64,000 nt of DNA, from contig NC_135257.1 in assembly GCF_964204865.1 (NCBI RefSeq), positions 9,610,001-9,674,000 of the forward strand. The letters are read 5' to 3'. The notes below the pieces were generated by a model, which saw only the letters and a list, made by a program, of their open reading frames with translations, was not told the origin of the DNA and made no database searches. The stretch comes from Styela clava (lineage: Eukaryota). This document shows positions 1 to 18,953 of the stretch, piece after piece (positions within the stretch are counted from its first letter, which is position 1; every line of letters starts with the position of its first letter). Made by a program: the position numbers and the translations under genes.

Positions 1-3000
1 TCGACCTATCCAACAGGCTGAATGAAAAGCCGACCAATCCAGAACAATGTCTTTTTGGAAAACAATTCACGGATCACATGTTTGCCGTTGAATGGACGAG
101 AAAGAAAGGATGGGGAATTCCACAGATCAAGCCGCTTCAAAATCTGAGCATGCATCCCGCTACTTCAGCACTTCACTATGCCATCCAGGTTGTTAACTTT
201 TATGTGCAAATAAGAGTGTCATGTTGTCAAATATTGACCGATGACTACAGACTGGATCTTGTTGTCAAATATTGACAGATGTTAGTTTACAATAGGTTAT
301 TGGATTAACTCAATTCGTCATTTTCTTCATGCGTCAATCTTGGTATGCCACAGTAACAGGTGATTTTTGTTATTCAAAAAAATTGGATTTGGAAGGTGGA
401 TCAATACCTATTCTTTCTTAGCTTTTACCGGTCTGTTTCGTAAGTCCGTTCAGTGTTTACCCTATTACACTCGATAATTACTAATCCTATTTTCAATACA
501 ATTAACAAACAGCTGTTCGAAGGTATGAAAGCATATCGCACGGTCGATAATCGAATCGCCATGTTTCGCCCCATGCATAATATGGACAGAATGCTAAGGA
601 CAGCTCAAAGAGCAGCACTACCGGTAAGTGACAATTTGAACCATTTGAAAGTGATGTATCCAGATGTCGTTAACTTGTAGTTTTCATTGTGACATAAGAA
701 GAAATCGATTGCCGCCAATCGGCATATGTATGCACGTTTGCTTATCCACGTGATACGTAACATTTCGTGCTGCTCAAATATGCAGGTGCATTTTTTATTT
801 CAAAACCAAAACACCTTTGTTGCAACAAAATTAATCGAATTAAGCTCTTTGTTTTCCTATTTCTAATTTCGACCAAATCCACTCTGTGAATTAGGACGTC
901 AACTCTTGTTTAAATTTATCCAATTTACTTGTATTGAATTTTTGTCAAAAACAGTAATTCATAATGAGCGCGGGCAACAGACATGTCGTCTTTCTGCAAA
1001 TCAGAAAAGTAGTTCTCATAAAAGCTTGAGAAGTTGAGAACAATGATTGCCGCTTTGAGCGAAAGCTACATTTGTTTAGAATGAATTAGGTCAAATTTTG
1101 AAGGACACTCAACGCACGATGAAGGCTGGCAACATAATACATCATTGAAAGTTCTTTTCGCTTTGCCATATGACAAGGTATACTTTCGCAATATTATGTT
1201 TGTAATATTTTCGTACTGGCTTGTAAAAGCTAGTTTTCCATACGAAGTTATCAAAATATTACAAGAATAAAAATCACAAATAACACTCATTCAATATTGG
1301 TACATCCTATGTCATCGTTGCATCATATTTCGGTTGTTTACACATTCAGTGGTATTTTTCTTCCGGCGTTTTCAAAAGCGTAACCGGAATGGAGCTTCGC
1401 CTTCAGGCCAGCGTATGATGCAACGATTACTCACTAACTTGCTATGATGATCGGTCTATGATGTCATATATTGTTATACGAGTCTCGGATGATAAATTAC
1501 ACCAAAAATAGAGGTCGAAAAACATTTGCTTCCATTCTAAGCGCATTATCAACTCTGATGGACTATAATATTTGATTTTCCTCTATCGTGACTGGATGAA
1601 AACCTTTAATGTATGCGATCATTGTAGTAATACGATATATACACAGCTTTTAATTCCATTTATTTCCGTTGCGTTGACTTATATCTAAATAAATCATTTG
1701 CTACCCTGCAATTCCGAAATTAGTTTTACGTACATGAGCGAAAAACAAATTTTGACTGAATTATTCTTGTGAAGTATGAATCCCATTTAGAAGCCCGCAG
1801 TACATCATCTCTCGTGAGAAAATGACTATGTATATTTCATATATGAAGGCAAAGCTAAATAGCGGAATTAGAAATAGGAAAACTCCATTTGCTTGTTTGA
1901 AATGTTATTTATTTCCTTACAAAAGTGTACCTTTTTCGGGGAATACTGAAGAAACGCAACGAATTCAGTGGAACTTATGAATGACTAATTAATTTATTGT
2001 TGTCACAAATATGATCAGTGTTTTGAGTATTGTTCATATTGTAGTTTTTCGATGATCTTTAATCAGAATATAATTTCAGTTGCGAGACGGCTTGTTCTTA
2101 GTTAAATGCTCGTTTTTCCTTTTCTAGGAATTTGATAAAGAAGAATTTTTGAAATGCATTTCCGAATTAATTAGAGTCGACAACGAATGGGTCCCATTTT
2201 CAACCAAAGCTTCTCTGTACATAAGACCAACCTTCATAAGCACAGAGGTAAAGTACACTTATCTTTGCTAAAATTTGATCTCCTTCAAGCATGATTTAAA
2301 GTTTTGATTCGGTTTATGTGGCGTTATCACTCTTTACAACTGAACTGTTACTTTCATTTGATAATCAAAACATATCACTATTTTGCAGCAAACGCTTGGA
2401 GTTAACGTACCAAATTCAGCTTTATTATACTGCATTTTATGCCCGGTCGGCCCCTACTTCGAAACAGGAGCATTCGAACCAGTCTCACTTATGGCAGATC
2501 CAAAATATATAAGAGCTTTCCCAGGCGGTGTTGGAGCTTACAAATTAGGAAGGTATGTATGTAGTTTTTATCGAATTTCATATTTCCACTTATAATTTCT
2601 CCGCAAATGCTCGCTGGCTTGAACTGTTTGTCAAATGGTCGGTTCGTATTTCCCTCATTCAGGATTAACAGACTCTGTATCATTTCCTGTTAGATGCATT
2701 GCTCGCGTAATATAGAAACAGCTCACTCGCCCCCGAACGACTCTATGATGCTATTTTATTTAAATACATACGTCATCTTCGATTTTACAAACCGAGGTTA
2801 TTTTTCAGTACTTTTCCATTAATCTATCAATTTGTTTCGACTCTAATCGATATAATAATCACGCACCAATCTTATATTTAAATATATTGTTATTTATGGG
2901 CGGCTGATGGTGATAAATTCAGGTGATTACCTATGAAATTGTATGAACTTAAAAAGCCTACGACACTCGGCTGTGACCTTGCTGTGTTGTATTATTACAC

Positions 3001-7991: not shown

Positions 7992-10900
7992 ATTTGAGAA
8001 CAAGATAAACCTGGCACTCTTATCGACCAATAAGCGTTTTGTAGACGACCATACCTCCTCCAGTCAACATAGACAAACCTTGATACACGAGGGCTTTCAA
8101 ATATAAAAATCAATGTCTGTGGAACACGTATATAGTTTGCCTTTAGGCAGCACCGGAGATTTTGTGTTCGTATTCCATTTGAAAATTTAATATTATTCAC
8201 TGCTTATTTACATATTGTTGAAAATCAGGATCAATGGCTTAGAATTTTGAAATCTAGACGAAGAATCTGATTGTTTCAATTCATAACCTGTTTGAAATTC
8301 AATCGTTTTTCTCATGAACGCAACACTATTTATTGGCTCATGCGTCTACAGAAGTTTGAAGATTTTATCAGCTTTCAGTTTATTTTGTTTTTTTCCCTAA
8401 GTACAGGCGTTTGATCTTTACATCATGACACATTTTGTCTTTTATGGCAGATTTCGTGATGCCGTTGTTTTTTGCTTTTCGTTTTAATTACAAAATTTCG
8501 TTCTTTATTTTTTTAGATTGCTTATGTTTGCCGTGCTAATACGATATCACACCGAGTACACACCTAAATTTTTCCATGTGGGATATTTTTGATCTTTTTT
8601 CTTTGTTCTTCAACATTTGGTCAATCTGTCTCGTGAAACTTTTCTATCAATGGCCCTTGTTTAGCTAATTCAATTTTCAACCGACCTTGCTTGTCATGAT
8701 TCAGTCCCGAAATCAGCTAAACCTGTTTTAATATACACAGATTTCATTTGATTTTCTCACGTATACACAAAGTCTTGTATGCTTGCCTATTTATTTAGTT
8801 TTTAAGTTATGCTTTTCACGTTCATATACACAATTTTGTTGCTTTAGTTTTAGCTATCCGCTTTATCGCCAAATAAAGTTGAAGCCACAACTGTTGAATG
8901 ATATACTTTTTTTCACTTCATAAAGGATGTCATAGGATTTTATTTTTACCGGCTATAAGATTATCCATTTCCACGCAGGCTTGTCACATTTGATATTTCT
9001 TATCAATGTTCGCAGGCTTTTGTTATCATTTACACATGCAGCTATAAGAACATCATACACTGTCGAAAATAACCACCAAATGTAGCAAAATCCGATATGG
9101 AGTGTTCCATTTTTATGAAGCGTATTAAACATTGAATATATTACAGAGGACGCGCCATTTACAAACAACTTCATGTATATCTTTTTTGATCGCAAGCAAC
9201 ATATAAATTTCAATCTTTGCGTTCAGAGTGTTTAAAATATAGACTATTTGGTATATTTTCAAAAAATTAATGCTCCCGCCCGCCATCTAGCGTTGTGCTA
9301 TTTCTTATGCTATGGTAAAATTATTATAAAGAAGCCCAGTTTATACACAAAGAATATTAATTATATTTGCTTTGAATGTTATAATGTGTTTGCTGTATAT
9401 AATTGATAGTGCGTTTTGTATTTATTATAGTATTCTTTAATTTACAAAACGAGTACAATCTCGACTGTAATCGCCTGGTCAACTTAAGACACTGATTTTC
9501 TGTATTTCTTTCGCAGAGTTAATAATTGTTTGTTTGTCTCGCTAGTTAATGTATGTTGAATCAGACAATAATTCTAGTATTTTCATGGCATTAAATGACA
9601 ATAATTTTTTGTATATGGATTTTTCCAAAATCTGCGATATGCATTCAAGAATACTGAATTCGATATTAGCTGGACTATAGATGTCGTTTAGTAGTGTCAA
9701 ATTATGTTCATATAGAATTAAATTGCTTATTTCAACGAATAATCTAAAACTGTCAGAAACACCCATTTTCTTGGTACCCCATTTTACAATTTGTAACTGC
9801 AAACACTCGAGTTTTCTTGCTTAAAGGTAAATGTTTCTCCTTGCCCAAAATAAACTGTGTTCGCCGATATTGCTGTAAATTTTGTAGATATCAATATGTA
9901 TGTAGATTAGGTTTCATTTTGTTGTTTTGTGAAAATAAAAGTTCACGAAAATCCAGATGTCTGTTTCTTGATGGCTAGCGACGATTTGAGAAGATGTTCA
10001 TTCAGTGTTCATTGTCATTACATAGGAGATGTTTTGCACTGTTTGAATTATACTACCTATTACCTAATGAAATTTTGCTTGTCATGTGCAGGTTTTTTTA
10101 AACCTTTTATCAGGGCCCGCCTCATGAATCGCCAGTAATTTCCTGCACGCCTCATTCAGTGTTAACCGGCACCAATGATTTCCCTACACCCCCTACAGTC
10201 ATTGTCTTCTCGCTTTTAAACTATTTACCAGATATTTGAGCTTACATTTAATTAATTGATAACTACGAAAAAATAAAAGAAGGCAACAATCCATACGAAA
10301 CTTATCAATAAGATGTTATCAGTCTGATTATTTATATCAATTTGTCGTTCGGTTACCCCGCTTCAACAGGTGAAGAGACAAGGCGTATTATAGTTAATAT
10401 AATACGCTTTATTATTCAGTTAAACGACCTAATTCTTTTCGAAAACGTGTCAATAATATATAATTGAAATTTTTTCATCGTTATTGTTAATGTTCACTCA
10501 TCGTTTCATTCGTGTACATTAAATAAAAATAACGATATTATATGGAATATTAAAAAATCCGGAATCTAGAACATTTTCAATCCTCCAAAAAATCATAATG
10601 GTTATTGAAAGAGAAGTAAAATTTTCTGTGCATTCACTATTTTTTTTTTTGAGATTAAATTTGTACACAGGCGCTTCCGTAATCTTGCTGGTAAATAAAA
10701 GACGCTTGTTCATTCATGAAATGTGTATTTTACTCATTATTATTGGATCGAACATTTGATAATTCATGGAGATATGTTACAATGCTTTTATCCAATTTAA
10801 AACTTCCCCCAAATTATACATTTACAATTTCAGCCAAATATTTTTTTGGTGAAAAAACATTGTGAGGCGATTCAGGTATCCCTGTTGCGTCATTGCCACG

Positions 10901-11000
10901 AAAATATATCATTTTAATATGTATTATGCTGAATAAGAGAACACAGTAAATGTTATAGTCGCCTACAGTAAAGTATTTGAAATATTTCATATAACTAGAA

Positions 11001-12739
11001 CTATCCTCTTCTTCCAGCTTTTCCATTTCTCACAAGTGGGCAGTAAGTTCGGACGACATGAGTCTTGATTCCTGCTTTTTTTAGTTGTCTCTGGATGAGC
11101 TTTCTCAATGTTGGCGTGTTGCGCCTGAGTTTGGTCAAAACCCATACAGCTCGCTCGTCTTAACGTGGGATATAATATAATAAATATTTATGAAACTACC
11201 TGTCGAGAAGAAGAATAAATTTGTCGAGAAGAATTTACACTTACTATTTGGGAGGCAAAGTGAAGCGATGAGAAAGCGACGTCGTCTATCAGCGTAAAAA
11301 GAGACAAGGTTGCGGTGACCTTTAACCTCTGTAATAAAAATGAAAAAGAAATCAGTGAAAGTATTCAGTTATGGGGAGAGTTAGATTTGAATTGATTATA
11401 AATTTCGCCGTTTCTTATTCTTCGTGCTAACAATGTCTTTGCGCAATTTTAATGCAAATTTCAACTCACCCTTTGACAGAATTGACTTGCTGGTTTTGGG
11501 ATAGTTGTATCGTATGATGTTTCTCCAGGAAGCAGCTGTAATATAGTAGAATAAACGGCGTCATCAAGACGTTGTTAGGGTCCTAACATTTTGGAATACG
11601 GACTTGATAGTTGCAATGATATTTTAATATGAGTGAGTGTGAGTTCGCCTACATGTAGATAACTAAAATGAATGGCGTTAGCAAGACAATGTTAGAATAC
11701 TAACTTATTTCATATATAGATCTCATAGTAGAAATTATTTGCTCATTACAGGTCAGTGACTGCTCATACATAGCCCTATTTAGAGTGAAAAGCGTTGTAT
11801 GATTACTCTCGTCGCAAAGTCATAATTTTGCAGTGATAAAAAAGCCATGAAATTTCGAGAACTGAATATGCAAATTATTCGTAATCTAGAGGAGACAGAT
11901 ACAATTGAAAAAGGTGTATTTTTATGCTTCGACTGACTGTCATATTGCAATATTTTATTTTTGCAAGAAAAAGTGATATAATTTCCATGCAGAGCAGAAA
12001 TAAATGGTATACTCACTGAAATCTTTTGACAGATCATATACGTTTCCACTGATATGCTTGGCATCGATCTGATATACTTGATGTGGATTAGGTCTGCAAT
12101 TCAAAAATAGTTTTACTATGTTAGGTTTTCCATAAAAATAGTCATATTTTTGTTTTTTCTCACCCGTATTTTAAGCTGATTTTGATCGCAGATTTCTTTC
12201 CTCTTTGCACAACACTAAAACGACTGCATTTATACAAGTCAGTAAATTCATCCTTACTGTTCATTGCCCAATTCCAACCTCCGGAATACTGAATTTAGAA
12301 TATATAAATAGTACAATATTTGAAAGTTATATCAAAAATTTTCAGAATATTTGAGTAAAATAACCGAACATTTAGCACGATAGCGCAAAAATTCTGAGCA
12401 AGAGAAACAGCGATAATTATTAATTTTCATAACGTTGGCGTATATATTTCAAGATAAGTCCTACTTATACAAGCTTTTTAGTAGCAAGTCCAAATATATG
12501 AATGCAATAAATACATAAAATTCTGATTTATTTTACAGTTAGTGTATTTAAATAAGGTTTTAGGTAGATGTGATATCATAAATGCATACAGTAAGTTTAA
12601 TTGTGCATAGATATTCAGGAATTATGTTCCTTACCTGCTTGAAATCAATAGCTGCCGTCTTTTTCAACTTCTCGCAGGCCAAAACCCCCCAATTGGATAT
12701 TTGGACAATTACAGCAATGAAAATTAGCAACTTCAACAT
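11001..12739 (-). CDS. Secreted lipocalin-like (ApoD/bilin-binding-type) protein, 204 aa; exons 12739-12635, 12288-12164, 12093-12017, 11535-11470, 11328-11245, 11158-11001
   Basis: Six exons join through GT-AG introns (phases 0,2,1,1,1) into one 615-nt ORF: MLKLLIFIAVIVQISNWGVLA|CEKLKKTAAIDFKQYSGGWNW...YKC...FYADRRRRFLIASLC...AVWVLTKLRR...TYCPLVRNGKAGRRG*. It has a hydrophobic signal peptide, an SCR1-like DFxxYxGxW motif, an SCR3-like WVLTK followed by a helix, and four Cys spaced as in ApoD-type lipocalins. The last acceptor is a weaker AAG. Confidence 0.8.
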
Positions 12740-13642
12740 TTTTTAGATGTTTTCGGTCCGCCAGACAATCCTAAAATGTTCAAATATTAACTATCGACGA
12801 TAATTATACCAAAGACACTTTATCATTAAAATATTACTATGAAAAAATGCAAGTAAAAAGCAATTGCCTTTGCGTGACATTTAGACGACTGATAGTAGCC
12901 ACACACTTGTAAAAATATTGCTGGAATCGCAGACTAATCCAATGTTTTTTTAAGTAGTGTGCCATCTGTTTTATATGGGTCATAGTCATATTGAGTAGAA
13001 GCATGTATATGTTTACGGAAATGACTAGGACCTACCATAATCTCACGAAAACTTCAATATGTTATTTGCGTGAGTTTACGATAGAAAACAGGGATATTAA
13101 AGCTGTTCGGAATAAAAAATGTTTAAAATATTGGGTGAGATATAGTTTTAGAATTGCATAATATTTAGTATCAATACGTGACATGTAATCAATCAGGCAC
13201 AAGATTATTATATCTGACTCTACATTCAAGAGTATGATATTATATGATGTACTGATGTATAGGATATATATATAAAGAATATCAGAAAAGTTTAGTCATA
13301 AAAAACACACAATCTGGTTCATACACACGTATGGTGTTTACGGAAATGGTACTAATCTCATGAGCGTGTCTCTGAGATTTGCGTAATCTTTCGTTTTATT
13401 TTCCTGAAACTGTTTTAAATATTATACTATTATCGATATTTATATATATGTAATTTTCCATGGTGTTTTAGGGTCTGTTATTCGCTGTCGATACATGATT
13501 CATTTGGCACGAGACGAAACAAAGAAGCGTGAGACAGTTCTGGTACAAGTCCCCGTGAGTCCGAGCTCCTTCAAATTTTAAAGCTCGATTCTCATGTACG
13601 GCCCAGTTACCTGTTGTCACGTCAAATGTCGAGTCGCTGATA

Positions 13643-17930: not shown

Positions 17931-18953
<1,023 letters not shown>

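What the first reader, a model, noticed from the sequence alone, without database searches (positions are those of the whole stretch)
11001..12739. Hidden six-exon gene encoding an extremely cationic secreted lipocalin
Seen: the ORF track lists none of its exons in the correct frame, yet six GT-AG-bounded exons splice into a 204-aa ORF with a signal peptide. By hand count the 183-aa mature chain has about 40 Lys/Arg against about 11 Asp/Glu. The usual SCR2 motif (TDY) is replaced by YADRRRRF, an extra 66-nt exon adds a basic amphipathic segment (TASWRNIIRYNYPKTSKSILSK), and the tail ends KAGRRG. Established: GxW near the N-terminus, a late W-x-L-x-R/K motif and four cysteines typify ApoD/bilin-binding lipocalins, most of which are not this basic. 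Inference: a divergent outlier lipocalin that may bind polyanions (sulfated glycans, membranes, nucleic acids) or anionic ligands, or act as an antimicrobial, adhesive or matrix protein.
Basis: partly seen in the sequence, partly recalled or inferred. Interest (0 to 1): 0.8.

Follow-up and report, generated by a model that had tools for sequence, protein, structure and literature searches.

The report
Very basic sea-squirt lipocalin gene
This is a real, spliced and expressed gene of the sea squirt Styela clava that encodes a small secreted protein of the lipocalin (ligand-binding barrel) type with an unusually strong positive charge; public databases already list the gene, but only as "uncharacterized".

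Summary
Six minus-strand exons (12739..11001), all bounded by GT-AG, add up to 615 nt, which is 204 codons plus a stop. All five junctions appear in intron-free contigs from three independent studies, and none appears in a DNA run. The spliced product is identical to NCBI "uncharacterized protein LOC120345386 [Styela clava]", so the gene is not hidden from public annotation.

Direct Pfam and PDB sequence searches find no lipocalin. The assignment rests on indirect evidence:
- The only non-self hit in the whole genome is an intronless lipocalin-like ORF.
- A profile of 18 such ORFs matches the protein: 28 bits by hmmsearch, hhalign P 1e-4, and 0 of 200 shuffles reach the real score.
- That same profile hits bilin-binding protein (E 1e-6) and ApoD.
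- AlphaFold with this family alignment gives an 8-stranded barrel plus a C-terminal helix, with Z 12 to L-PGDS and beta-lactoglobulin.
- The gene has six coding exons with intron phases 0,2,1,1,1, the pattern published for chordate lipocalins.

The mature chain has 40 K/R against 11 D/E (net +29). The 27 relatives sampled range from -17 to +10.

The "extra exon" claim is only partly right, and function is untested. The scan had already found lipocalin arrays elsewhere in this genome.

The parts
12740..12929 (-). 5' UTR (at least 190 nt, no intron in the X2 contig)
   Evidence: The X2 contig runs colinear from 12635 to 12929 (table 8). The X1 contig leaves the genome near 12779, which is unexplained.
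12635..12739 (-). Exon 1: start codon, signal peptide (residues 1-21), Cys22 and N-terminal segment up to ...IDFKQ. It ends in phase 0, two residues before GxW.
   Evidence: (joint 12288-12635 in X1, X2, X6).
12164..12288 (-). Exon 2: SCR1 (G38-G39-W40), strands A to C, Cys56. It ends in phase 2.
   Evidence: (joint 12093-12164).
12017..12093 (-). Exon 3: strands D and E. It ends in phase 1.
   Evidence: (joint 11535/11532-12017).
11470..11535 (-). Exon 4 (66 nt, phase 1 on both sides): basic segment predicted as two helices (101-113 and 118-123) inserted between strands E and F. The allele at 11533 gives Ala104Ser.
   Evidence: (joint 11328-11470; table 5c).
11245..11328 (-). Exon 5: strand F with the altered SCR2 (Y-A-D), the RRRR turn, and strand G with Cys149. 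It ends in phase 1.
   Evidence: (joint 11158-11245).
11001..11158 (-). Exon 6: strand H with SCR3 (W158...K162), helix A1 (170-180), strand I, Cys192, the basic tail KAGRRG and the stop codon. It carries about +14 of the net charge.
   Evidence: (100% match to P0001 residues 154-204).
10716..11000 (-). 3' UTR (at least 285 nt), much more polymorphic between runs than the coding sequence.
   Evidence: tables 3 and 8 (the X2 contig reaches 10716; X1 pieces reach 10640).

Best explanation
A single-copy, six-exon, transcribed gene of Styela clava (NCBI LOC120345386) encodes a 204-aa precursor. A signal peptide of about 21 residues is removed, leaving a 183-aa secreted protein.

The protein folds as a divergent (outlier) lipocalin: an eight-stranded barrel, a C-terminal helix, four cysteines in the columns conserved in its relatives, and a helical insert in the E-F loop at the open end of the barrel.

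It is related to a large lipocalin-like expansion in this genome, but its charge has drifted or been selected to an extreme (+29). Half of that charge lies on exon 6 (strand H, helix A1 and tail), and an RRRR turn sits at the closed end of the barrel.

Shown: gene model, splicing, transcription, homology to the Styela family, the charge outlier status.

Inferred: the fold (model built with a family alignment), and the function. My preferred function, at about 40%, is that the cationic outer surface docks the barrel onto polyanions such as sulfated tunic or granule glycans, microbial envelopes or nucleic acids. The barrel may or may not still carry a small ligand.
For: Gene model and expression:
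- exon structure, and all five junctions in three studies with none in the DNA run.
- no intron-free copy elsewhere in the genome, so the spliced contigs are mRNA and not a retrocopy.
- the product is identical to the NCBI protein.

Homology:
- The best non-self genome hit is an intronless ORF on C19 (E 0.097 genome-wide). Pairwise BLASTP gives E 2e-4 over residues 6-174.
- That ORF hits PDB 1bbp at E 5.5e-5.
- The profile of 18 relatives against P0001 gives hhalign P 1.1e-4 over 147 columns. The score of 33.4 compares with 13.9 +/- 2.5 in 200 shuffles, maximum 24.8. hmmsearch gives 28 bits over residues 5-166.
- The same profile hits 1bbp at E 1.3e-6 and ApoD 2hzq at E 3.7e-3.

Fold:
- AF2 with a 28-row alignment gives pLDDT 68.6 and pTM 0.66, with lipocalin strand order.
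- Foldseek finds 232 PDB hits at E<=1e-3, and the listed top hits are all lipocalins.
- VIA-align gives Z 12.1 to L-PGDS, with 153 residues aligned at rmsd 3.1.

Gene structure: intron phases 0,2,1,1,1 with six coding exons equal the pattern reported for amphioxus and vertebrate ApoM/Ptgds lipocalins (PMC3184775).

Charge: +29 against -17 to +10 in 27 relatives.
Against: - Neither the six exons singly nor the full protein reach any Pfam lipocalin model, even at E<=10. phmmer against PDB finds no lipocalin.
- Single-sequence AF2 is uninformative (pLDDT 38).
- The confident model used an alignment made of lipocalin-like relatives, so the fold is not an independent test. Its confidence is only moderate.
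- No orthologue was found in 1.84 billion representatives with exon 6 or by word search, so conservation cannot be assessed.
- All four coding differences between alleles are non-synonymous, which is compatible with weak constraint.
- Nothing here tests binding, localisation or tissue.
- No SignalP run was possible.
Confidence: 0.8

Rival explanations
1. An ordinary small-ligand carrier lipocalin. In this reading it is one more fast-evolving member of the huge Styela lipocalin expansion, and its charge is a by-product of drift or only tunes solubility or localisation, with no dedicated polyanion-binding or defence role.
For: - The genome holds at least 150 matches to the related intronless ORF, and earlier notes report about 80-100 six-exon loci. 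With so many members, extreme ones are expected.
- One relative already reaches +10.
- All four allele differences change the protein.
Against: - +29 is 19 units beyond the next relative and 30 or more beyond the family median.
- The reading frame and all four cysteines are kept in the contigs of every run laid.
- The coding sequence is about ten-fold less polymorphic than the 3' UTR (table 3).
Confidence: 0.3
2. Not a lipocalin at all. In this reading it is an orphan basic secreted protein, its weak similarity to the Styela family is spurious, and its barrel model is imposed by the alignment.
For: - There is no direct Pfam or PDB sequence hit.
- hhalign probability is only 56%.
- The model reaches only pLDDT 68.6 and was built from a family alignment.
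Against: - 0 of 200 shuffles reach the real hhalign score, z about 7.8.
- hmmsearch gives 28 bits over 160 residues.
- The only non-self hit in a 377-Mb genome is a lipocalin-like ORF, and it is colinear.
- W40, D138, W158 and all four Cys fall in family-conserved columns.
- The intron before GxW and the intron before strand H sit where the six-exon Styela lipocalin genes have theirs.
- The phase pattern is 0,2,1,1,1.
Confidence: 0.07
3. A precursor that is cut at its many di- and tetrabasic sites (RRRR, LRR, KK, GRRG) into short cationic peptides. This would be analogous to the known cationic peptides of Styela clava blood cells, with the barrel serving only as a carrier.
For: - There are many basic clusters, and the C-terminus ends G-R-R-G.
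- S. clava is known for cationic antimicrobial peptides (clavanins; mentioned in PMC5090204).
Against: - The basic clusters lie inside predicted strands, turns and the A1 helix of a compact disulfide-linked domain.
- No repeated peptide units or acidic spacers typical of such precursors are present.
- No evidence of processing is available.
Confidence: 0.05

Closest known systems
Styela clava intronless lipocalin-like family (e.g. NCBI LOC144411842, G000:C19:6244943-6245650; array at C1:7.10-7.14 Mb)
   Same: - Signal peptide, and a Cys before an I/D-W/F...G-x-W motif.
- Four aligned cysteine columns.
- D of SCR2 and W...T-R/K of SCR3.
- A long segment with a conserved Trp between strands E and F.
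- Profile match of 28 bits.
   Different: - Those genes are single open frames without introns, whereas this gene has five introns.
- Identity is only 15-21%.
- They keep TDY(E/K)NY and are mostly acidic (net -17 to +10), whereas this protein is +29.
Bilin-binding protein / insecticyanin / apolipoprotein D (PDB 1bbp, 2hzq)
   Same: - These are the nearest solved structures by sequence, reached through the family profile.
- 1bbp is Foldseek rank 1 for the model.
- By my recollection of ApoD/BBP (not tested here), they share a four-cysteine, two-disulfide layout with a Cys ahead of GxW.
   Different: - There is no direct sequence hit from P0001 itself.
- SCR2 is altered.
- There is a helical insert of about 25 residues in the E-F loop.
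- The charge is extreme.
[quoted passage not shown]
   Same: - Best structural alignments: Z 12.1 for L-PGDS and 11.9 for beta-lactoglobulin.
- Six coding exons and intron phases 0,2,1,1,1, as reported for ApoM, Ptgds and the amphioxus gene (PMC3184775).
   Different: - Sequence identity in the structural alignments is 7-15%.
- It was not tested whether introns 4 and 5 sit at the same structural positions as in vertebrate genes. By my recollection the vertebrate fourth intron follows strand H, whereas here the last intron precedes it.
- There is no evidence of enzymatic activity.
Siderocalin / lipocalin 2 (own knowledge, not tested here)
   Same: It is a secreted lipocalin of innate defence that is basic and uses positive charge to hold an anionic partner. 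LCN2 chains are among the Foldseek hits.
   Different: - In siderocalin the key basic residues line the calyx. Here the model puts the RRRR run in the F-G turn at the closed end, and most of the charge on helix A1 and the tail.
- The net charge here is far higher.
- No ligand is known.

Membership tests
Lipocalin family (calycin fold) | Eight-stranded antiparallel up-and-down beta-barrel followed by a C-terminal alpha-helix and a ninth strand | tested here: met
   The AF2 model with a 28-row family alignment has strands 41-45, 58-63, 69-75, 83-92, 95-97, 132-138, 143-150 and 154-161, helix 170-180 and strand 190-192. The listed Foldseek top hits are all lipocalins. VIA-align gives Z 12.1. Caveats: pLDDT is 68.6, and the alignment consists of lipocalin-like relatives.
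Lipocalin family (calycin fold) | SCR1: G-x-W in strand A after a short N-terminal 3-10 helix | tested here: met
   G38-G39-W40 is present. W40 is an invariant column in alignment A3. A helix at 33-36 precedes strand A.
Lipocalin family (calycin fold) | SCR3: basic residue (R/K) at the end of strand H | tested here: met
   W158-V-L-T-K162 aligns with the family's W-V/I-x-T/M-R.
Lipocalin family (calycin fold) | Direct match to Pfam PF00061 / PF08212 above the gathering score (an operational criterion, not a structural definition) | tested here: not met
   No lipocalin model is listed for the six exons or for P0001 at E<=10. The bridging ORF itself reaches only 14.6 bits against a cut-off of 23. 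Membership therefore rests on transitive profile evidence and the fold.
Lipocalin family (calycin fold) | Chordate lipocalin gene structure: six coding exons, intron phases 0,2,1,1,1 | tested here: met
   Cumulative exon lengths of 105, 230, 307, 373 and 457 nt give phases 0,2,1,1,1. The pattern is as quoted in PMC3184775. Positional equivalence of introns 4 and 5 with vertebrate introns was not tested.
Kernel lipocalins (all three SCRs) | SCR2: T-D-Y-x-x-Y at the end of strand F | tested here: not met
   The aligned column reads A137-D138-R139-R-R-R where relatives have T-D-Y-E/K-N-Y. Only the Asp is kept, so the protein is filed as an outlier lipocalin, not a kernel lipocalin.
ApoD / bilin-binding-protein-type lipocalins | Two disulfides linking C1-C3 and C2-C4 | tested here: inconclusive
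   Cys22, 56, 149 and 192 fall in the cysteine columns of the relatives. Model coordinates could not be read, so the pairing was not checked.
Styela clava six-exon lipocalin arrays (earlier findings s1-825803, s1-819797) | Shared intron positions and detectable sequence similarity | tested here: inconclusive
   The array genes in L003 have the first intron two residues before x-x-W and the last exon starting before the W-V-x-W-V strand, as here. However, tblastn of P0001 against that array gives only noise. The middle exons were not mapped.

The most novel reading that the evidence does not exclude
A lipocalin barrel has been converted in tunicates into a polycationic effector. In this reading it is a secreted protein of about 21 kDa and +29 charge that works through its surface, binding or permeabilising microbial envelopes or cross-linking the sulfated glycans of tunic or blood-cell granules, rather than through its pocket. 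That would be a function class not described for lipocalins.
Probability: 0.25. Interest if true: 0.6.

Novelty: new variant of a known kind. Interest (0 to 1): 0.42.

Why it matters
Lipocalins are mostly acidic to mildly basic carriers of small hydrophobic molecules. A member with net charge +29 and pI above 10 would show how far the barrel tolerates surface re-coding. It is also a concrete candidate for a polyanion-binding or host-defence protein in an invasive, biofouling sea squirt already known for cationic antimicrobial peptides.

The gene also gives an intron-bearing relative of a very large intronless lipocalin-like expansion in this genome. That is useful for working out how the expansion arose, for example by retroposition.

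The practical gain is modest. It provides a family name and a testable hypothesis for a RefSeq "uncharacterized protein".

Tried and rejected
Searches that found nothing useful:
- Exon-by-exon Pfam scan at E<=10: nothing.
- Exon 6 and exon 2 against PDB sequences: only chance hits, spackle and neurofibromin.
- Exons 2 and 6 against the own genome: only self.
- Pfam PF08212 against the own genome: no match.
- Full protein against Pfam and PDB: chance hits only.
- Single-sequence AF2: pLDDT 38, unusable.
- E. coli Blc as a seed for a broad lipocalin profile: returned only enterobacterial Blc at 75% identity or more. hhalign against it was weak (P 0.038), although it aligned the homologous C149...W158...TP region. 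This was a poor use of one protein search.
- Word search with the bridging ORF: only itself.
- tblastn of P0001 against the six-exon array 3.7 Mb away: noise.
- Literature searches for the locus name and for cationic lipocalins: nothing specific.
- (bacterial promoter/terminator scan) was irrelevant to a eukaryotic gene.

Idea rejected: that the four arginines line the calyx like siderocalin's basic residues. The model places them in the F-G turn.

The identical database protein P0001, fished with exon 6 alone, was used instead.

Full report
**1. The observation**

The feature lies on the minus strand. Reading 12739..11001 in three frames and locating the boundaries gives six exons:

| Exon | Window coordinates | Length (nt) |
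|---|---|---|
| 1 | 12739..12635 | 105 |
| 2 | 12288..12164 | 125 |
| 3 | 12093..12017 | 77 |
| 4 | 11535..11470 | 66 |
| 5 | 11328..11245 | 84 |
| 6 | 11158..11001 | 158, stop included |

Each intron begins with GT and ends with AG. The exons sum to 615 nt, which is 204 codons plus a stop. The in-frame ORF pieces that contain the exons are only 34-59 aa long, which explains why a prokaryote-style ORF track would not show them.

Residue counts taken exon by exon, plus the four split codons (G, T, E, N), give 41 K/R and 11 D/E in the precursor. After removal of a 21-residue signal peptide (VLA|C by the -3/-1 rule; no SignalP was available) the counts are 40 and 11. Net charge is about +29, and pI is 10.5 (Biopython) to 11.3 (another pK set).

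**2. Is it a real gene?**

One run search found nine probable RNA runs that hold 17-29% of the words of a 2-kb stretch. That share is about what the exons and UTRs make up. It also found DNA runs that hold all of it.

Laying X1, X2 and X6 (three studies) and the DNA run X10 on 10600-13100 showed the following:
- All five predicted joints (11158|11245, 11328|11470, 11535|12017, 12093|12164, 12288|12635) appear in the three probable RNA runs, with CT..AC ends, which is GT..AG on the minus strand.
- None appears in X10, whose 5.9-kb contig is colinear with the genome.
- A single 1,091-nt X2 contig spans 10716..12929 across all five joints. This gives a 5' UTR of at least 190 nt and a 3' UTR of at least 285 nt.

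The genome holds no intron-free copy of these exons, so the spliced contigs are mRNA, not a retrocopy. These are contigs, so neither strand nor expression level can be read from them.

The apparent odd joint 11532|12017 with "AAG" between the two sides in X2 and X6 is an allele at 11533 (Ala104Ser).

The four coding differences seen between runs are I6T, W17L, A104S and H186P. All are non-synonymous. Even so, the coding sequence is roughly ten times less variable than the 3' UTR (table 3).

**3. Is it hidden?**

No. A representative search with exon 6 alone (51 aa) returned P0001, a 204-aa protein 100% identical over its residues 154-204. Its full sequence equals the exon translations. The word search names it "uncharacterized protein LOC120345386 [Styela clava]", with no precomputed Pfam domain.

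So the organism is the sea squirt Styela clava, and the gene model is already public. What is missing is a family assignment.

**4. What is it?**

Direct sequence evidence is blank:
- No Pfam family for any exon.
- No lipocalin model for P0001 at E<=10.
- No lipocalin among PDB sequences.
- No other protein shares words with it.
- Exon 6 has no relative at E<=0.001 among 1.84 billion representatives apart from one repeat protein that matches by chance.
- Single-sequence AlphaFold failed (pLDDT 38).

The link came from the genome itself. Searching G000 with P0001 gave the six exons and one further hit, a 236-aa intronless ORF on contig 19 (E 0.097 for the whole 377-Mb genome).
- Pairwise BLASTP gives E 2e-4 over residues 6-174. 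It aligns the Cys after the signal peptide, GxW, Cys56, the D of SCR2, Cys149 and the W-x-x-T-K/R strand.
- That ORF (NCBI LOC144411842) hits bilin-binding protein 1bbp at E 5.5e-5. It hits Pfam Lipocalin below threshold.
- It has at least 150 matches in the genome. Many are intact intronless frames of 212-240 aa, with a tandem array at C1:7.10-7.14 Mb.

A profile of 18 of these ORFs (A2) gave the following:
- It hits 1bbp at E 1.3e-6 and ApoD 2hzq at E 3.7e-3.
- It matches P0001 with hhalign P 1.1e-4 over 147 columns.
- In a local control, the real hhalign score was 33.4. For 200 shuffles of the mature chain with the signal peptide kept, the score was 13.9 +/- 2.5 with a maximum of 24.8.
- hmmsearch without filters gives 28.0 bits over residues 5-166.

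In the 28-row alignment A3, W40, Y96 and D138 are invariant. All four cysteines of P0001 fall in cysteine columns of the relatives.

**5. Fold**

AlphaFold2 on A3 gave pLDDT 68.6 and pTM 0.66. Its elements, in order:
- helix 33-36
- strands 41-45, 58-63, 69-75, 83-92 and 95-97
- two helices, 101-113 and 118-123
- strands 132-138, 143-150 and 154-161
- helix 170-180
- strand 190-192

This is the lipocalin order A to H, A1, I, with a helical insert in the E-F loop.

Foldseek against PDB gives 232 hits at E<=0.001. The listed top hits are all lipocalins: BBP, C8 gamma, beta-lactoglobulin, LCN2 and Bla g 4. VIA-align gives Z 12.1 to L-PGDS (153 residues aligned, rmsd 3.1) and 11.9 to beta-lactoglobulin.

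Because the alignment consists of lipocalin-like relatives, this is a consistency check rather than an independent proof. The statistical link in section 4 justifies the alignment.

**6. Gene structure**

Intron phases are 0,2,1,1,1 with six coding exons. [quoted passage not shown] 2003. Hence the exon number is canonical, not raised by one.

Exon 4 is a symmetric phase 1-1 exon of 66 nt. It corresponds almost exactly to the predicted two-helix insert (residues 103-125 against helices 101-123). The relatives have an equivalent or longer segment with a conserved Trp there.

Whether it arose as an inserted exon is an open inference. By my recollection of vertebrate lipocalin genes, the first three introns (before GxW, in the C-D loop and in the E-F loop) match, while the last two may not. 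This was not testable here.

The six-exon lipocalin array that an earlier follow-up reported 3.7 Mb downstream (L003) is hit exon by exon by my family profile. It shares the position of the first intron and of the last exon's start. Even so, P0001 shows no direct similarity to it.

**7. Charge**

Trimmed at the column of Cys22, the 27 relatives have net K+R-D-E between -17 and +10, with a median of about -7. P0001 has +29.

By exon, the net charge is about +2, +5, -1, +4, +5 and +14. Half of it therefore lies on strand H, helix A1, strand I and the tail.

The RRRR run is the F-G hairpin turn in the model. In lipocalins that turn lies at the closed end of the barrel next to SCR1 and SCR3 (established knowledge of the fold). 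It is therefore probably a surface patch and not pocket lining.

AT-rich codon bias cannot explain 18 arginines, and neighbouring family members in the same genome are acidic.

**8. Mechanism and rivals**

Most likely this is a secreted outlier lipocalin.
- About 40%: the cationic surface docks it onto polyanions (sulfated glycans, microbial envelopes or nucleic acids).
- About 30%: it is an ordinary carrier whose charge is incidental.
- Smaller odds: it is a peptide precursor, or it is not a lipocalin at all.

Nothing here tests function.

**9. Novelty and verdict**

The gene is known to annotation but unnamed. The lipocalin assignment and the charge outlier status are new. They amount to a new variant within a known family, in a genome where this scan has already reported large lipocalin expansions.

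Interest is moderate: 0.42.

Noticed in passing
window 17931..18938 (-): An uninterrupted 335-aa ORF that reads as a complete glyceraldehyde-3-phosphate dehydrogenase, about 5 kb from the lipocalin gene. It is either the functional intronless gene or a processed copy.
   Followed up: no
G000: e.g. C10:20928228-20928848(-) with C10:20932538-20932852(+); C9:6578523-6579152(-) with C9:6582813-6583136(+); C13:1996291(-) with 2000516(+); C17:12770214(+) with 12766314(-): Many dispersed copies of the intronless lipocalin-like ORF (open frame of about 217-218 aa) are paired, about 4 kb away on the opposite strand, with a 111-aa open frame that matches residues ~42-151 of the same query. This looks like a repeated unit spread over many chromosomes, possibly carried by a mobile element or by a recurrent segmental duplication.
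   Followed up: no
G000:C1:7104559-7144095 (L013-L031): A tandem array of at least 12 intact intronless lipocalin-like ORFs on both strands within 40 kb, 31-61% identical to the C19 ORF.
   Followed up: partly
window ~12771-12779 (-), 5' UTR: The X1 transcript-like contig leaves the genome here and continues for 35 unlike letters, while the X2 contig stays colinear to 12929. An AG (minus strand) lies at 12772-12771. This could be an alternative 5' exon, a trans-spliced leader or an assembly chimera (table 7).
   Followed up: no
window 10716-11000 (3' UTR) versus 11001-12739 (CDS): Between runs, the 3' UTR shows about 17 variable sites in 285 nt, while the 615-nt coding sequence shows four. All four are non-synonymous: I6T, W17L, A104S and H186P.
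   Followed up: partly
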